Below, in pieces: positions 2,955 through 53,631 of a stretch of 64,000 nt of DNA (positions are counted from its first letter, which is position 1; the number at the start of each line of letters is the position of its first letter). The DNA is taken from sequence record MK250017.1. The stretch is one strand, 5' to 3'. The translations under genes and the position numbers were made by a program. The notes beneath the pieces were generated by a model. It searched no databases, had not been told where the DNA came from, and saw nothing but the letters and a program-made list of their open reading frames with translations.

Positions 2955-3278
2955 ATGGCAGGTTTTGTATATCTTATTTGTAACCCTGATTAGAATTGTT
3001 ATAAAATCGGAGTAACAAGGGATTTAGCATAGAAACGATTAAAATAGTTATAGACAGGAAATTCATCAAAATTACATATAGTTCATTCTGTATATAGTGA
3101 ATATCCATTTAGGTTAGAATCTATGTTACATAAAACATTTGATTCAAAACGTTCTGAAGGTGAATGGTTTAATTTAGAATAGAAGGATGTAATTAATTTT
3201 AAAGATATATGTAATGAAAAAATTAATATTATTAATATTATGAAAGATAATCCATTCTTTAATAAAGATTTAAAATGA
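2955..3278 (+). CDS. GIY-YIG superfamily T5orf172/Mug113-like protein (TAG=Gln)
   Basis: Absent from the ORF track. Read with TAG=Q: MAGFVYLIC..CYKIGVT..RLKQLQTGN..GEWF; 107 aa, 5 TAG, ends TGA. Confidence 0.85.
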
Positions 3279-33189: not shown

Positions 33190-33287
33190 AAAATTATAAT
33201 TTATTTTTATATCTACGTCTAATTATGAAATACAATAAGTTACTTTACATATCTAATAAATAATGAAAATTAATTATATTCTAATAC

Positions 33288-34154
33288 ATGAATTCTAAAT
33301 AGATTGGAAAGTTAATATATAATTTAGATCTAGGAAAATTTAATAATAAAACAAAATTATTTGAATCAAATAATAAAGATAATTGGTGGAGAAATGAAGA
33401 AACGTTTAATACAATAAAATATCATCCATTAAATTCTAATACAAATAATTTATTATATAAAGAATATGAACAGGAATATTTATATGAAGGATTAATATGT
33501 TCAGCAGATCCAAATAAAACAAAAGATATATTAAATAGGAATGCAATTGGTTTTATACATGATATAAGAATTGTTTATAATCCATTATAGATAGATATGA
33601 AAACGCCTGTAATAGATTTTTTTATATATAAAGAAGACTATTATGATTTAGAATATGGAAAATTAGCTTATAATGAATTATTAACATTAATTAATAATTT
33701 AGGTTATTTCGTATCAGGTAAGAAAGAATTATCAACTATTATTAATATTGTTATAATGCCGAAATTTTTATATGAAGTTACAGATGAAATATATAAAGAA
33801 GATGGTATATTATATCATATAACACCGTTATAGAATAAAAAGAAAATTTTATAGAAAGGATTAATTCCAAAATATAAAAATTATAGATTAGATAATTATC
33901 CTGATAGAATATATTTTTATAGAAGTAATCAAAAAAATAAATTAGATTTATTATGTAAAAATTTATCATGTGATACATGTATAAAAGAATGGTTAATTCT
34001 TAAAATTAATCTTAAGGATAGGAGAAGTTATAAAGAAAATGATAAATCTACAATGTATCGTTTTTTTGAAGATCCAAAATCATAGTATGGCGTATTTACA
34101 TACGAAAATATAGATCCACAATGTATAGAATTTTATAAAGAAGTTAAATTATAA
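33288..34154 (+). CDS. ADP-ribosyltransferase/KptA-fold protein (TAG=Gln)
   Basis: LYHITP..KILQKGLIPK..YPDRIYF..ILKINL..TYENIDP; 288 aa; AATAAATA at 33255. Confidence 0.65.
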
Positions 34155-34206: not shown

Positions 34207-35250
34207 TTATGCTTGATAAGAATACTTGTCAAACATTGAATCAATATTAGAGGGATGCACAGCATTAATGCCGATTTCATCACATTTCCTTAATGTATCA
34301 TGAAAATCATCTATAAGACATACATCCTTAAGATCCCACTTCATCTTATGAGCAAGCTGCTCAATAAAGACGTGCTTGAAATTTTTATTTCCAACGAACA
34401 TTCGGTTCTCAACAGGAATTTCAGGAAAATATTTATCAAGCCATTCATTCTTCTCCTTCCACGCAATTGAATTGGCACATGCAGTAACAATATATACATT
34501 ATTCATGTCATAATGTTCCTTTACAAAATCAATAACATGTTTCACTGGTTTCAGATTTTTAAATAGTTCGCTACTTACAAAATCAGAATTACCATGAATG
34601 TCAAGTTTTGCTTTGCCATAACAGGCTAATGTACCATCCATGTCAAGAAGTAAATACTTATTAGTAAAATAATCAACGCGTATGAATTCATCTACTAATG
34701 GAATGTATTTATTCTTACATGCTTCAATACGTAAGTTTTTCTTATAAATATCTTCAACTGGAACTTTACGAGCTCGTCCTTGAAGTCTCTTTATACAAAC
34801 TTCTACAGGAGTATCGAAGAATACACAAGTAATCTTATCTACATTATGTTCTCTTAAATAATCTATAATACTAAGATTATAATGATTATTAATTCCACCA
34901 CCATCAAGAATAATATTAACGTTTAGATTTTTTGATTTTGCAATTTCAAAAATCATTCGTCTTGCTAATTGAACAGAATCCTCATGAACAACTTCAGGAT
35001 GTTCATCAGTATATCCTTCTAACATAGGTTTAATTTCATCAGCAGAAATAATCCATGTAGAATTATCAATTAAATTATTCTCTAATGCCTCATTAATTTC
35101 TTCAAATGAATAATCATCAAATGGATGTGTTGTTGATAATAGAGTTGACAACATATCACATAAATGACCTGCATCTGAATAATTATTTGATATAAACGTA
35201 GATTTACCGCAACACGGTAAACCTACGAAATACATAAACTTACTAATCAT
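34207..35250 (-). CDS. P-loop kinase fused to a HAD 5'(3')-nucleotidase-like domain
   Basis: GLPCCGKST; LLDMDGTL; LIDD. Confidence 0.8.
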   Translation of the reverse strand: MISKFMYFVGLPCCGKSTFISNNYSDAGHLCDMLSTLLSTTHPFDDYSFEEINEALENNLIDNSTWIISADEIKPMLEGYTDEHPEVVHEDSVQLARRMIFEIAKSKNLNVNIILDGGGINNHYNLSIIDYLREHNVDKITCVFFDTPVEVCIKRLQGRARKVPVEDIYKKNLRIEACKNKYIPLVDEFIRVDYFTNKYLLLDMDGTLACYGKAKLDIHGNSDFVSSELFKNLKPVKHVIDFVKEHYDMNNVYIVTACANSIAWKEKNEWLDKYFPEIPVENRMFVGNKNFKHVFIEQLAHKMKWDLKDVCLIDDFHDTLRKCDEIGINAVHPSNIDSMFDKYSYQA

Positions 35251-35277
35251 AACCTATTATAATTTATAAGTTTATTT

Positions 35278-35615
35278 TTAATCAATAGTACCATCAAGAA
35301 GTTTATGAACTGCATCTTGACGTGTTTTACGAATTTCTGCAAGTGTAAACTCTTTTACAAGCTTACCGTCTTCAAACACCGTCTTCAATTCATTCTTATC
35401 TGATGCTTCATCTTCAATAGAAACTCGATCAATAGGTTTATAATTACCATTTTCATCCTTTACAACCATAATAAGACCACGATGTGATTTCTTTGGTGTA
35501 CCAGTAACAGTCTTTGGATCTTTAAAGATCTCTATCTGCTTATTATCTACTTTACACCATGTTGCCTTACATGCAAATGCAAGTTGGTCACGGGTGTTCA
35601 TTTGATAGGAAAATG
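35278..35615 (-). CDS. nadV: Nicotinamide phosphoribosyltransferase, exon 2
   Basis: Spliced junction restores LGIGSFSYQMNTRD; KDP..KKSHRG; joined CDS 1584 nt = 528 codons. Confidence 0.85.
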
Positions 35616-36992
35616 CTTAGAAATATTGCTTTATATGTTCATAAATATTATCAGTAAATAACTCAGAAGAATATGTTGTATATTTCCTAATATTTTTATA
35701 TTCCTATAAAATTTGTTGTTCTATACAAAATGCAGTATAAAGTTCATATTGTTTATAATATAATATCTCTATATCTAATACAATACTAGAATTACGCAAT
35801 GCAGATGAACGTAATGAACGTATTCTCTACTTTGGTGTTTCTTTTTTTGTTATACCTATTTTATAAAGTATTTGGTTATTTGTTTTATCAATAACTTTTA
35901 AATAATATAATATTCCTATATGTGATTTTTGTTCAGGATGATTATTAAACCAATCTATATTATATCCACCTGGTACATATCCATTTAATATAGTTCTTTC
36001 TATTTTACATTTAGGACATTCCTAACCTGCATTTAGAAATTTAGAAATTCTTTTTTCAAAAATCCCATGTTTTGGACAAATAATCTAAATTTTAGATTGT
36101 TTTGTTTTATAAATGTCTCTATTGCTTTCTGGATATGTATAATAATCGCCATATTTTTCTTTACACATACCAATAATCTAATCATATGTAAATGATTTAT
36201 GTAATGCTCTCATTTTATTACCACATAATGGACAACCATTTTTATTGCCGTTTATTATATGTGTACGAGCTAATACATTAAAAGCACCATGTATAGGACA
36301 GATAACCGTTATTTCTGAATTTACTAATCCGGTCCAGTTATCTAAATTATATGTAAATTTATTATTATATTTTTTATTAGCTATTTCTAAAAATTCTTCT
36401 TTTGTTATTCTGGATTCAATTTGAGCTTTTTTATTTGCTAATGTTCCCTTGTATGTTTTATCTTTATATTTCTATGCACACATTGGACATCCAAATTTAT
36501 TTCTTAAATGATCCATCGGGCGTTGCCAGAATGTTCCATGTTCTGGACAAATTATTTCAACTGGAGTTCGCATAGTTATATATTTTACTTTACTATAATC
36601 AAACTTATTATTGAATAATTTTTCACCTCTATTTATGAAACTTTGTTTATAAAACTCATTTCCACGGACTATTTCTTCACCCTCATCATTACATGCTAGG
36701 GGCAAGGCGCTTCCACCATTATTGGAATCTAATGGCGTACTCCCCGAAGGGATAGTCTCTGAACCTTCCTAATGAGTAGTCAATTCATTAGGCTTGGCTG
36801 CAGATTCTTGTACTATATTTTCTATTAAATTATCTGACATCTAAAAAGTATTTTTATGTTTCATTTTATTTATCGTGATAATAAAATATAAAATATGAAT
36901 ATACACATTCCTGCAATTCACCTTGTTATTCAATGCCACTTACGCAGCAAGGGAGCCATTTTTACAATCTGCCTCAACAGCAGTGTACGCTA
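35616..36992 (-). mobile_element. Group I intron in NAMPT
   Basis: Exon 1 ends in U and the intron ends in G; P AATTGCAGGAA, Q AATCTGCAGC, R TCAGAGACTA, S AAGAAATAGTCC; IGS AAAATG-G-CTC (36953-36962) pairs both exons. Confidence 0.92.
35617..36840 (-). CDS. Intron-encoded endonuclease (three CPxHG..CPxC Zn-ribbon repeats + YKIGIT GIY-YIG-like domain; TAG=Gln)
   Basis: Frame open from ATG 36840 (or 36864) to TAA next to the 3' splice site. Confidence 0.8.
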
Positions 36993-38238
36993 ACCCAATT
37001 CCCAAAATCAAATTAGTAGCAGCAAACATCTTATCTTCAAGTTGCGCATAAATCATTCTTTGACGTTTCATATTGATAGAATCACCATAAAGAAGTCCAA
37101 TATGTGTATCAAGTACTTTATATCCCTTCTTATTAAATGTTCCACCAAATGTATTCCAAAGAAATTCATATGAACCCATCTTTACAAATTGATCATTTGC
37201 TTCTGAATCACCACAAATAATCTTTACAGGATCACCACTATCAGGACGGATAACTACTCGACCATTTCGACTCATAATCTGTTCCTTATACTTAGGTACG
37301 ATCTTTGTAATAAAATACCAGTAATCATAGCCGTCTGCTACAATAGAAATAATACCATCAGGAAATTCATCAAGCATTCTCTTAAAATAAATTTCATCAT
37401 CTGGAATACCAGAATCATTTGTTGCATTTGAACATTCCACTGAATGTTCTGTTGCAGGTACTGTAGCTGCAATTAATTCTTTCTTAGGATCTGCTTTATA
37501 ATAGTATTCAATCATTTTAATTGCAGGTACTGATTCAGAACCGCAAAATGATGTAAGATGTGCCATGCCTGAAGTGATTGTAGTTTCAAGAGAACTCATA
37601 CCTCTCATTGAAAAATCATGACACAAGAAATCAAGGTTAGACAAATCATTAGGATTATAAAAACCTGTTTTCATTGCATGTCTAACAAGTTCACGTCTAT
37701 AAACATCTGAAATTGTAGCGGATGTCATTGGTTGCCACAAAATATTTGAAAGAATAGACTCCAAATAATTAGTAAGCCAAGCAAAATCAGGATGTGTGTT
37801 TGTGATTGTCAAAACAGGACATCCGATTGGACAATATGAACCTTCAGGAAGTGCCTTAATTCTAATAGGGAGATAACCAAGCTTATGCAAAGCAATAATA
37901 TGATCTACTCCTACTTTCTTTGCAACTGCTTCACCAAGAAATGATGTAGTTAAATCAGTATATGTTTTTCTAACAGTATCTTCATCAAGGTTAAAGAAGA
38001 AATTATTAAACGTATTAATAAGATACTTCTTGATAAAATACTGAATACCAAATACAACTACACCTTCATTTGCCTCTGGGAGGTACTTATTTCCTCGTGG
38101 TGTAAAATTACTAAAAAGTTGTGTCATTCCCTTAGGATACATACAGTGATGACCAAGCTTGTAGCCATCAGTCATAAGCATTGCATTGAGAAGTATGTCT
38201 TCTACCATTACATGCTGAGAATCTTTTACGTTTGTCAT
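36993..38238 (-). CDS. nadV: Nicotinamide phosphoribosyltransferase, exon 1
   Basis: TDGYKLGH, HDFSMRG, VPATEHSV, IRPDSGDP, YGDSI motifs. Confidence 0.92.
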
Positions 38239-38309
38239 AAAATTAATTTATTTGTTTTTATTATTTGATTACAATAATAATCTGTTTGTTTGATTAACTG
38301 TAATCGTTA

Positions 38310-42852: not shown

Positions 42853-42953
42853 TAGATGTAGGGAGACTTGAACTCCCAAATTCCATACCTAGAATACCAT
42901 GAAATAAACTCAAAATATTATTGAGTTGCGTTTACCCATTTCGCCATACATCT
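42853..42953 (-). tRNA. Class II (Leu/Tyr-like) tRNA-like gene with aberrant anticodon loop
   Basis: Acceptor AGATGTA/TACATCT + A73; D arm GGCGAAATGGGTAAACGC; T arm GGGAG-TTCAAGT-CTCCC; anticodon arm ACTCA-ATAATATTT-TGAGT; ~30-nt variable region. Confidence 0.75.
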
Positions 42954-50230: not shown

Positions 50231-50351
50231 TATTATGCTTTTATTTAGTTTTTATATTTATTATATATAAAAATAGGTAATATGTTTATGAAAAATACAT
50301 ATTACCTATCAAACAAAATTAAACAATTAAATATATATATTATGAAAAATG

Positions 50352-50744
50352 TGGAGACATCCGGAGTCGAACCGGAGTATTACTAACTTGTCAATAATAA
50401 ACTATCTACGTGCGTATTTCTTAATTAGTTTTCATCATACATTCTTAGGAGTTAAACAGTTTAATGTCGTAATCACTCTTATTGGACAAAAAGTATAGTG
50501 AGTTTTATTTAACAGAGAAAACACTCACCGAACTCCGTGGCGATGCTCAACTTACCTTGTAAGGAGCAAATGCTTCAATGGGTTTATATTACCAATCCTA
50601 CCGGATTAAGCTGCCATACGAAAATCAATTTCGTCGTCATTTAAATTTATTTGCTAAATTTCTTTGTATTACTACAAAAGGCTTTTAACTTTCCTACACG
50701 ATTTATTACCACATAATTAATAAGCAAAACCAAAAAATGTCCCC
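50352..50744 (-). ncRNA. ssrA: tmRNA
   Basis: 5' GGGGACA pairs 3' TGTCTCC (G3.U70); T arm CCGG-TTCGACT-CCGG; tag frame DDEIDFRMAA* at 50606-50638. Confidence 0.92.
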
Positions 50745-52614: not shown

Positions 52615-52652
52615 AATTGTAAAAAATTAAAAATATTACTAATGTCATGTCG

Positions 52653-52724
52653 TTGGGGATCCGAGACTCGAACTCGGCCTAAGAGTTTTAGAGACTCCTG
52701 TACTGACCACTATACTAATCCCCA
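52653..52724 (-). tRNA. Amber suppressor tRNA (anticodon CTA), Gln-like
   Basis: TGGGGAT/ATCCCCA (U1-A72, G2-C71, G3-C70); loop CT-CTA-AA; canonical T arm. Confidence 0.92.
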
Positions 52725-53525: not shown

Positions 53526-53557
53526 AATAATTTTTAATATTTAATAACCATATTTTG

Positions 53558-53631
53558 TAGCCCCACTCAGATTCGAACTGAGTCAGCGAAAGTTAGAGTT
53601 TCGAATGCTTAAACCATTACATCATAGGGCA
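53558..53631 (-). tRNA. Second amber suppressor tRNA (anticodon CTA), Gln-like
   Basis: TGCCCTA/TGGGGCT (U1.U72 mismatch); CGAAA-CTCTAAC-TTTCG; CTCAG-TTCGAAT-CTGAG. Confidence 0.92.

What the first reader, a model, noticed from the sequence alone, without database searches (positions are those of the whole stretch)
35278..38238. Self-splicing group I intron inside NAMPT, an anti-NAD-depletion gene
Seen: complete P/Q/R/S core, terminal G, and an IGS pairing both exon ends; splicing restores GIGSFSYQMNTRD. Established: phage group I introns are mostly reported in nucleotide-metabolism, polymerase and packaging genes, and phage Nampt is part of the NARP2 route countering NAD-depleting defences. 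An intron in this gene is unusual to my knowledge and makes NAD salvage splicing-dependent.
Basis: partly seen in the sequence, partly recalled or inferred. Interest (0 to 1): 0.68.

Follow-up and report, generated by a model that had tools for sequence, protein, structure and literature searches.

The report
Mobile intron splitting a phage NAD-rebuilding gene
A 1,377-base mobile group I intron, carrying its own DNA-cutting enzyme written in the phage's altered genetic code, interrupts the NAD-rebuilding (anti-defence) gene of the gut megaphage Lak-A1. It is a real and well-built intron in a host gene not reported before, but of a familiar kind.

Summary
The window is Prevotella megaphage Lak-A1, which reads TAG as a sense codon.

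- **Split gene.** A Nampt-family gene on the minus strand is split at 36993|35615 by a 1,377-nt insertion. Lak-A2, C1, B1 and B7 carry the same gene uninterrupted, which fixes the junction to the base.
- **Intron anatomy.** The insertion has a group I core (Rfam 46.2 bits, just under the cut-off of 50; E 4.6e-10), with P7.1/P7.2, U·G at the 5' splice site and a terminal G. A 24-bp long-range helix loops out the ORF and places that G beside P7.
- **Homing endonuclease.** The intron encodes a zinc-finger/T5orf172 endonuclease with 6-8 in-frame TAGs. The host gene has none.
- **Signs of mobility.** These are presence/absence among strains, an intron more conserved than its flanks, and a patch of changes just downstream of the insertion site.
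The host gene is Namat-type (NARP1-like), not KVP40-type Nampt (NARP2). The intron sits in the Ser391 codon, at the start of the adenine "selectivity clamp" helix.
- **Splicing not proven.** RNA-library contigs show the exact joint, but intron-less alleles could give the same contigs.

Verdict: a new member of a known kind. Recoded intron endonucleases were already proposed for Agate phages.

The parts
36993..38238 (-). Exon 1 of the Namat/Nampt-family gene (415 codons plus the first base of the Ser391-equivalent codon); no TAG codons
35616..36992 (-). Group I intron, 1,377 nt, from U(+1) to the terminal G
   Evidence: Intron-less alleles define both ends; Rfam hit
36991..36996 (-). 5' strand of P1 (GGGU|UA); the 5' splice site follows U 36993
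   Evidence: MFE fold pairs it with 36958-36953
36953..36962 (-). Internal guide sequence: AAAAUG (P10 with the exon 2 start CAUUUU) overlapping UGGCUC (P1)
   Evidence: pairing present; weak statistically on its own
36657..36894 (-). Ribozyme core matched by Rfam RF00028. By inspection: P3 36848-36842 / 36715-36710; P4 36839-36833 / 36804-36799; P6/P6a 36797-36785 / 36775-36764; P7 36757-36753 / 36671-36667; P8 about 36709-36678
   Evidence: alignment; coordinates
36716..36752 (-). P7.1 (UCCC-UUCG-GGGA, 36752-36741) and P7.2 (CCAUUA/UAAUGG, 36735-36716), lying between P7 and P3': a subgroup IA-type extension
   Evidence: Direct reading of the sequence; coordinates; both hairpins appear in the MFE fold
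36632..36664 (-). 5' strands of a long-range P9-like helix (three 8-bp segments), directly after P7
   Evidence: duplex -14.5 kcal/mol against shuffles at -6.1 +/- 2.1; 0.4% of shuffles reach it
35618..35645 (-). 3' strands of the same helix; it ends 2 nt before the terminal G
35616..35616 (-). Terminal (omega) G; the endonuclease stop codon TAA (35619-35617) lies directly before it
35617..36864 (-). Homing endonuclease ORF: DUF723-type zinc-finger repeats plus a T5orf172 (GIY-YIG-like) domain. Possible starts are ATG 36864, ATG 36840 or TTG 36705. It has 6 in-frame TAG from the TTG, and 8 in the frame open from 36939. The frame runs through the ribozyme core
35278..35615 (-). Exon 2 (last two bases of the Ser codon, 111 codons, TAA). 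Its first 87 nt hold 24 of the 29 differences from Lak-A2
52652..52724 (-). Suppressor tRNA (anticodon CUA), needed to read the endonuclease's TAG codons
53557..53631 (-). Second tRNA with anticodon CUA

Best explanation
A mobile subgroup-IA-like group I intron (1,377 nt) interrupts the Namat-type NAD-reconstitution gene of Prevotella megaphage Lak-A1. It sits inside the codon equivalent to Ser391 of SpbetaL1 Namat, at the start of the adenine 'selectivity clamp' helix.

Inferred mechanism: the pre-mRNA folds into P1-P9. The guide at 36962-36953 holds the 5' exon through a U·G pair and later the 3' exon (P10). A 24-bp long-range helix loops out about 990 nt of coding sequence and brings the terminal G to the P7 guanosine site. 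Two transesterifications then join 36993 to 35615 and restore a 527-residue enzyme.

The intron encodes a zinc-finger/T5orf172 homing endonuclease. Its 6-8 TAG codons can be read only with the phage's tRNA-CUA, so the endonuclease is probably made late, while the TAG-free host gene can be translated from the start of infection. The endonuclease presumably cuts intron-less alleles in co-infecting Lak phages and spreads the intron, together with some flanking exon sequence.

Shown here: the anatomy, the exact junction, the host-gene family, the presence/absence polymorphism and the conservation pattern. Inferred: catalysis, timing and homing.
For: - **Identity of the window:** Lak-A1, 100% identity.
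- **Split gene:** the family profiles run continuously across the gap.
- **Junction:** four intron-less alleles fix it exactly.
- **Core:** Rfam group I core at E 4.6e-10. P7.1/P7.2 hairpins, P7 pairing, U(-1) and terminal G are present.
- **Long-range helix:** closes the ORF loop at -14.5 kcal/mol; only 0.4% of shuffles reach this.
- **Endonuclease:** PHROG 681 at 3e-48; DUF723 and T5orf172 over their Pfam cut-offs.
- **Recoding:** two tRNA-CUA genes; 0 TAG in the 527 host codons against 6-8 in the endonuclease frame.
- **Independent copies:** two metagenome contigs carry the same intron at the same site. Intron identity is 100% and 99.2%, while the flanks fall to 97% and 93% with distance. 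The three core substitutions in L025 fall at predicted unpaired positions.
- **Clustered exon differences:** A1 and A2 differ in 24 of the first 87 nt of exon 2 and at none of the next 236.
- **RNA libraries:** a 394-nt contig in X16 joins 35615 to 36993 exactly, and X17 and X18 have shorter joint contigs. Intron contigs have about 5-10 times lower word depth than exon contigs in X15 and X16.
- **Host enzyme type:** Namat (PMC12774641).
Against: - The Rfam score (46.2) is under the curated cut-off (50), and the hit vanishes in larger searches.
- P1 is short (4-6 bp, with 2-3 wobble pairs). The guide pairing alone arises in 9% of shuffles.
- The fold z-score for the first 353 nt is only -2.0.
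- No covariation test was possible, because all copies found are 99% identical or more in the core.
- The RNA joints could come from intron-less alleles. Those exist as DNA, and the joined X16 contig carries an A2-type exon 2.
- The endonuclease start codon is not settled.
- Adps-type and NMNAT-type partner genes are both far from this locus.
Confidence: 0.85

Rival explanations
1. The intron has lost splicing activity, so the gene in Lak-A1 is a disrupted pseudogene. Intron-less strains keep the function.
For: Sub-threshold Rfam score; short, wobble-rich P1; no unambiguous spliced RNA.
Against: - Both exons are intact, free of stops and in register.
- Every core element and the terminal G are present.
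- The endonuclease frame is intact.
- The same intron is 99-100% conserved in diverged strains, with its few changes at unpaired positions.
- The long-range helix at the 3' splice site is unlikely by chance.
Confidence: 0.07
2. One reading: the host gene is a KVP40-type Nampt that makes NMN from PRPP and works with an Nmnat as NARP2.
For: Lak-A1 encodes a NadR-like NMNAT/ribosylnicotinamide kinase (TIGR01526 3e-56, under its cut-off; PHROG 3462 6e-63). Namat enzymes also make NMN from PRPP in vitro (PMC12774641). The Tyr396-equivalent is Met in Lak.
Against: - The protein is far closer to SpbetaL1 Namat (464 bits) than to human Nampt (about 210 bits).
- It is 31% identical to the KVP40-like enzyme and 47-48% identical to enzymes next to an Adps-like gene.
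- The clamp motif (Phe392, Tyr394; TPRxNKY loop) is of Namat type.
- The genome has a phage-type Prs/Adps-like gene (PHROG 619, 2e-53).
Confidence: 0.15
3. The gene works as two separate polypeptides without RNA splicing: 432 aa from exon 1 plus the read-in, and 107 aa from ATG 35601.
For: Both pieces are open frames with possible starts.
Against: The cut falls inside the conserved GIGSF...RD active-site helix. The second piece would start at the Met396-equivalent and lose Ser391-Gln395. A complete ribozyme sits between the pieces. Every one of about 150 homologues examined is single-chain.
Confidence: 0.03

Closest known systems
Phage T4 group I introns (td, nrdB, nrdD/sunY; subgroup IA2) with I-TevI/II/III
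   Same: A phage group I intron in a conserved metabolic gene, with P7.1/P7.2 extensions, a U·G 5' splice site and a terminal G. It carries a homing endonuclease and is optional among related phages. As recalled for sunY, the ORF lies 3' of the core, and a remote 3' splice site is brought back by pairing (my knowledge; not tested against those sequences).
   Different: The host gene is a Namat-type NAD-reconstitution gene. The endonuclease has a DUF723 zinc-finger plus T5orf172 architecture. Its frame is open through the ribozyme core and ends 1 nt before the terminal G. It is written with TAG sense codons.
Recoded group I intron endonuclease of Agate phages (Borges et al., bioRxiv 10.1101/2021.08.26.457843)
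   Same: An intron endonuclease rich in the reassigned stop codon, inserted in a gene readable by the standard code. The authors' proposal is that in-frame stops hold back endonuclease production until late in infection.
   Different: There the reassigned codon is TGA (to Trp), in another phage clade and another host gene. Here it is TAG, in a Lak megaphage. Lak papers report only tRNA introns.
SpbetaL1 Namat of NARP1 (PDB 9W5W/9W5X; PMC12774641; Osterman et al. preprint 10.1101/2024.02.11.579819)
   Same: The best solved relative of the host protein (E 6e-138). It shares the GIGSFxYQxNTRD clamp-helix motif with Phe392, Arg399 and Asp400, and the TPRxxK/R loop.
   Different: The Lak gene is not next to an Adps gene; a Prs/Adps-like gene lies about 100 kb away. 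The Tyr396-equivalent is Met. The Lak-A1 gene is interrupted by an intron. Its activity is untested.
Group I introns of crAss-like gut phages (for example cr116_1, major capsid gene)
   Same: The nearest core sequence in the phage collection (72% over 140 nt of P6-P8). It comes from a gut Bacteroidota phage and lies in a gene broken into pieces with an HNH endonuclease between them.
   Different: Different host gene, different endonuclease, and no similarity outside the conserved core.

Membership tests
Group I intron (Rfam RF00028) | Covariance-model score at or above the curated cut-off | tested here: not met
   46.2 bits against a cut-off of 50; E 4.6e-10 in a 2.1-kb search, full model length 1-253; not reported in whole-window or genome scans
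Group I intron (Rfam RF00028) | Conserved core helices P3-P8 with P7 (guanosine site) and the J6/7 and J8/7 consensus | tested here: met
   Alignment: GGUUCAGAGACUA and GAAGAAAUAGUCC; P7 GACUA/UAGUC; P3, P4, P6 located
Group I intron (Rfam RF00028) | U·G pair at the 5' splice site, terminal G at the 3' splice site, guide sequence pairing both exons (P1, P10) | tested here: met
   U 36993, G 35616, guide 36962-36953; the pairing alone is not significant (446/5000 shuffles)
Group I intron (Rfam RF00028) | Precise excision that restores the host reading frame | tested here: met
   At the DNA level, four intron-less alleles match the predicted ligated sequence exactly. RNA joints at 35615|36993 were seen but are ambiguous
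Group I intron (Rfam RF00028) | Guanosine-dependent self-splicing | not testable with these tools
   Needs in vitro transcription and a splicing assay
Subgroup IA | Extra hairpins P7.1/P7.2 between P7 and P3' | tested here: met
   UCCC-UUCG-GGGA and CCAUUA...UAAUGG at 36752-36716; the criterion is recalled from Michel and Westhof and was not checked against a subgroup model
Mobile intron with homing endonuclease | Intron-encoded endonuclease ORF, and presence/absence at one exact site among close relatives | tested here: met
   PHROG 681 3e-48, T5orf172 24 bits (cut-off 20), DUF723 50 bits. Present in A1 and in contigs L024 and L025; absent in A2, C1 and the B strains
Mobile intron with homing endonuclease | Endonuclease cleaves the intron-less allele | not testable with these tools
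   Indirect only: clustered exon 2 changes and an identity gradient away from the intron
Namat (NARP1) | Nampt-like catalytic core | tested here: met
   NAMPT_N and NAPRTase domains, NF006629 at 404.9 bits on exon 1 alone
Namat (NARP1) | Selectivity-clamp helix with aromatic residues (Phe392, Tyr396), absent from Nampt | tested here: inconclusive
   The Phe392-equivalent is present; Tyr394 (Phe in A2) is present; the Tyr396-equivalent is Met. The KVP40-like and human enzymes have GGGLLQ there
Namat (NARP1) | Adps gene within about 10 genes | tested here: not met
   The neighbours are a kinase/HAD phosphatase gene and an unknown gene. The only Prs/Adps-like gene is at record position 105.5 kb, against about 208-211 kb for this gene
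Namat (NARP1) | Adps homologue in the same genome | tested here: met
   L014 1462-2331: PHROG 619 at 2e-53; 29% identity to the Prs-like gene next to the Staphylococcus phage enzyme. Membership of the Adps clade itself was not tested
Nampt of NARP2 (KVP40 type) | Membership of the KVP40 Nampt clade | tested here: not met
   31% identity to the KVP40-like phi-ST2 enzyme against 47-48% to Adps-linked enzymes; motif differs. No full tree was built
Nampt of NARP2 (KVP40 type) | Nmnat encoded in the same genome | tested here: inconclusive
   A NadR-type NMNAT/kinase is present, not the KVP40 NMNAT-Nudix type

The most novel reading that the evidence does not exclude
The intron acts as a timing switch built from the phage's code change. 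Early in infection, without enough tRNA-CUA, ribosomes entering the endonuclease frame stop at the TAGs at 36843 and about 36773, before they reach P7. The ribozyme then folds and splices, and the anti-defence enzyme is made. Late in infection, suppression lets ribosomes run through the ribozyme core. This produces the endonuclease and at the same time unfolds the ribozyme, shutting off further Namat production. A second strand of this reading: two rival endonuclease genes contest the same 330-bp exon in natural Lak populations. One is the intron-borne gene in A1. The other is a free-standing LAGLIDADG gene directly after the stop codon in A2 and C1.
Probability: 0.12. Interest if true: 0.75.

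Novelty: new member of a known kind. Interest (0 to 1): 0.45.

Why it matters
1. It adds an anti-defence (NAD-reconstitution) gene to the short list of phage genes known to host group I introns. The insertion point is the enzyme's substrate-selectivity helix. In an unrelated phage the same motif carries a probable intein two codons away, which fits the rule that selfish elements settle in the most conserved sites.
2. The public Lak genome records are unannotated, and gene callers would report a truncated gene. Surveys of NARP1/NARP2 would therefore miss it or misjudge it.
3. It gives a second, independent case (TAG, Lak) of a recoded endonuclease inside a gene readable by the standard code. 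That makes the "code change as late-gene switch" idea testable on one small RNA.
4. Intron-bearing and intron-less alleles coexist in animal gut samples, so homing can be followed in nature.

Tried and rejected
- **Genome-wide Rfam scan** of four Lak records for more group I introns. It found nothing, not even this intron, so it is uninformative. The whole-window scan at the E-value threshold also dropped this intron.
- **27-mer from P7/P7.1 in IMG/VR**. It gave 5 unrelated introns that share only that motif, so they could not be used for covariation.
- **Phage records whose tblastn match came in two pieces**. All were single long genes with protein insertions, not introns.
- **Covariation test of the structure.** Not possible, because all copies are 99% identical or more in the core.
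- **RNA reads**. The exact joint was seen, but the joined X16 contig has an A2-type exon 2. Intron-bearing contigs in X17 and X18 also continue into A2-type exon 2. Spliced RNA therefore cannot be told from intron-less alleles.
- **Pfam scan of the 837-nt insertion in L055**. No intein domain was found. Calling it an intein rests on the in-frame C...HN|T boundaries and a LAGLIDADG-like motif only.
- **Joined exon model.** I searched exon by exon by reference and used the natural intron-less Lak-A2 allele (L002) wherever a full-length protein was needed. One local script joined 60 nt from each exon end for display and for a local BLAST against two loci. That gave nothing and was not repeated.
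Full report
**What the window is.** The stretch 35200-38300 is 100% identical to the four Prevotella phage Lak-A1 records (MK250015-18). These records are unannotated metagenome-assembled megaphage genomes of about 541 kb. Lak phages read TAG as a sense codon. The window holds two tRNA genes with anticodon CUA (52652-52724 and 53557-53631, minus strand), and many ORFs are open only with TAG=Q.

**The observation.**
- On the minus strand, a 432-codon frame (38238-36940) carries NAMPT_N and the first 175 of 239 positions of the NAPRTase profile. A second frame (35613-35278) carries positions 179-238. PHROG 448 (nicotinamide phosphoribosyltransferase) is split the same way, 11-391 and 393-497.
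- Lak-A2, Lak-C1, Lak-B1 and Lak-B7 carry the gene uninterrupted. Their sequence across the site (...GGAATTGGAT|CATTTTC...) equals the A1 sequence with 36992-35616 removed. The junction cannot be shifted by one base.
- Without splicing, the exon 1 frame stops 17 codons into the insertion.

**The insertion is a group I intron.**
- A scan of 35200-37300 finds Rfam Intron_gpI over its full length at 36894-36657 (minus strand), 46.2 bits, E 4.6e-10. This is under the curated cut-off of 50, and larger searches lose it.
- The alignment shows the family's hallmark strands (GGUUCAGAGACUA, GAAGAAAUAGUCC), together with P3, P4, P6/P6a and P7 (GACUA/UAGUC).
- Between P7 and P3' lie two clean hairpins: UCCC-UUCG-GGGA and CCAUUA...UAAUGG. 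These are the P7.1/P7.2 pair typical of subgroup IA (the criterion is from my knowledge of Michel and Westhof).
- The MFE fold pairs GGGU|UA at the 5' splice site with UGGCUC at intron positions 35-40, giving the U·G pair. The overlapping AAAAUG is a perfect 6-bp partner for the first six bases of exon 2, forming P10.
- This guide pairing is real but weak as statistics: 9% of shuffled leaders offer as much. The fold z-score of the first 353 nt is -2.0.

**The 3' end.** The core ends near 36657, but the 3' splice site is 1,040 nt further on. Three 8-bp segments directly after P7 (36664-36657, 36655-36648, 36639-36632) pair with the last 29 nt before the terminal AG (35625-35618, 35635-35628, 35645-35638). 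The duplex energy is -14.5 kcal/mol, against -6.1 +/- 2.1 for shuffles; only 0.4% of shuffles reach it. This helix loops out about 990 nt and sets the terminal G (35616) two bases from its end, next to P7. I read it as a P9/P9.0-like closure of an ORF-bearing loop. This is inference from pairing, not from covariation.

**The endonuclease.**
- Read with TAG=Q, the frame 36705-35617 gives 362 residues with six TAGs.
- It contains DUF723/treble-clef zinc-finger repeats (50 bits) and a C-terminal T5orf172 domain (24 bits, cut-off 20). It matches PHROG 681 "endonuclease" at 3e-48.
- Relatives at 26-36% identity are scattered in many phages.
- Its TAA stop is directly followed by the terminal G.
- The same frame stays open upstream to 36939, through the whole ribozyme core, with two more TAGs. 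Only 0.6% of shuffles leave 78 codons free of TAA/TGA, and the other two frames have 6 and 7 stops. The start is therefore probably ATG 36864 or ATG 36840, both inside ribozyme helices, rather than TTG 36705. This is not settled.
- The host gene has no TAG in 527 codons. The pattern matches what Borges et al. proposed for a TGA-recoded intron endonuclease in Agate phages: the host gene is readable at once, and the endonuclease only when the suppressor tRNA is available.

**Signs of mobility.**
1. The intron is present in A1 and absent from A2, C1 and all nine B strains.
2. Two metagenome contigs (OASL01000079.1 and OIXA01000380.1) carry it at the same site. The intron is 100% and 99.2% identical to A1, while identity falls stepwise through exon 1 and upstream to 97% and 93%. 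The three core substitutions in L025 lie at predicted unpaired positions (intron positions 135, 171 and 209).
3. A1 and A2 are 97-99% identical around the locus. However, 24 of the first 87 nt of exon 2 differ, none of the next 236 differ, and 5 of the last 10 differ. Exon 1 has a single change near the junction.
4. A2 and C1 carry a free-standing LAGLIDADG endonuclease gene (311 codons, six TAG) directly after the stop codon, where A1 has nothing. Two different selfish nucleases thus flank the same short exon in different strains.

**RNA evidence.**
- Twenty of the 24 public runs listed (11 studies; animal gut, manure, wastewater) hold all or part of the stretch.
- In four metatranscriptome runs, contigs cover both the intron and the exons.
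- In X16, a 394-nt contig joins 35615 to 36993 exactly, with 173 and 221 nt on the two sides. X17 and X18 show the same joint with short sides.
- Exon contigs have about 5-10 times the word depth of intron contigs in X15 and X16.
- This is what splicing would give. However, intron-less alleles exist as DNA, the joined X16 contig has A2-type exon 2, and intron-bearing contigs in X17 and X18 also run into A2-type exon 2. The data therefore do not separate splicing from mixed alleles.

**The host gene is Namat-type, not KVP40-type Nampt.**
- The best solved relatives are 9W5W/9W5X (E 6e-138 with the Lak-A2 full-length allele). These are SpbetaL1 Namat of NARP1 (PMC12774641). Human Nampt scores 1e-61.
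- Namat is distinguished by a "selectivity clamp" for the adenine of ADPR-PP: a loop around Arg40, and a helix with Phe392 and Tyr396.
- Lak has GIGSFSYQMNTRD where SpbetaL1 has GIGSFTYQYNTRD. Phe392, Tyr394, Arg399 and Asp400 are kept; Tyr396 is Met. Lak also shares the TPRxNKY loop with Bacillus and Staphylococcus phage enzymes that sit next to a Prs/Adps-like gene.
- The KVP40-like enzyme has GMGGGLLQQLDRD, like human Nampt.
- Identity is 47-48% to those Adps-linked enzymes and 31% to the KVP40-like one.
- Lak-A1 has a phage-type Prs/Adps-like gene (PHROG 619, 2e-53) about 100 kb away, and a NadR-like NMNAT/kinase about 180 kb away. Neither partner is linked, so the pathway assignment stays open, though it leans towards NARP1.
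- The intron sits in the Ser391 codon, at the very start of the clamp helix.

**Rarity.**
- No paper in the searchable library reports an intron in a Nampt or Namat gene. The Lak papers describe only tRNA introns.
- Of 80 IMG/VR homologues, 79 are uninterrupted at this site.
- The exception (L055, 44% identity) has an in-frame 837-nt insertion between the Phe392 and Thr393 equivalents. It has C...HN|T boundaries and a LAGLIDADG-like motif, and it gives no Rfam hit. This is a probable intein, two codons from the Lak intron site.
- About 2,000 phage records have the gene. The few two-piece matches I opened were single genes.

**Verdict.** This is a genuine, structurally complete and evidently mobile group I intron with a recoded homing endonuclease, in a host gene not previously reported. 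It is a new member of a known kind. The mechanism is well precedented, and splicing and homing still need a bench test. I sent no joined exon model to any search tool; I used natural intron-less alleles by reference instead.

Noticed in passing
L002 1962-2897 (Lak-A2; same in Lak-C1), between window positions 35285 and 35282: A free-standing LAGLIDADG endonuclease gene (311 codons, six in-frame TAG; LAGLIDADG_3 at 6.6e-10) lies directly after the Namat stop codon in A2 and C1 and is absent from A1. The last 10 nt of the host gene differ next to it.
   Followed up: partly
window 33273-34136 (ORF 33288-34154, + strand): An 864-bp segment present in Lak-A1 and absent from Lak-A2. It holds a 288-codon ORF with five TAG and no Pfam match, and may be another optional or mobile gene two genes from the intron.
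   Followed up: partly
L055 4656-5498 (IMGVR_UViG_3300049929_000026): An unrelated 138-kb phage contig has an in-frame 837-nt insertion in its Namat homologue between the Phe392 and Thr393 equivalents (CVSPE...SHN|T, LAGLIDADG-like motif). This is a probable intein, two codons from the Lak intron site. Pfam found no intein domain.
   Followed up: partly
window 50349-50744 (-): Phage-encoded tmRNA: Rfam RF00023 at 54 bits, over its cut-off of 47. ARAGORN did not call it.
   Followed up: no
window 42853-42953 (-): A 101-nt tRNA match (43 bits), longer than a normal tRNA. It is probably one of the intron-bearing Lak tRNAs described by Devoto et al. 2019.
   Followed up: no
window 34207-35250 (-): The gene just downstream of the split gene combines a P-loop kinase (AAA_33) with a HAD/NT5C-type phosphatase (polynucleotide-kinase-like PHROGs). 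It has no TAG codons. Any link to NAD metabolism is unknown.
   Followed up: partly
Lak-A1 record MK250015.1: 105.5 kb (L014 1462-2331), 30.7 kb (L012 1480-2637), 480.5 kb (L011 1420-1908): The genome encodes a Prs/Adps-like protein, a NadR-like NMNAT/ribosylnicotinamide kinase and a CoaD-like adenylyltransferase, all unlinked to the Namat-type gene. Partners for both a NARP1-like and a salvage-type route are thus present in one phage.
   Followed up: partly
L010 (crAss-like phage cr116_1) 585-3410: The major capsid gene is annotated in pieces, with an HNH endonuclease between them. An unannotated stretch at 3001-3132 resembles this intron's P6-P8 core (72% identity).
   Followed up: no
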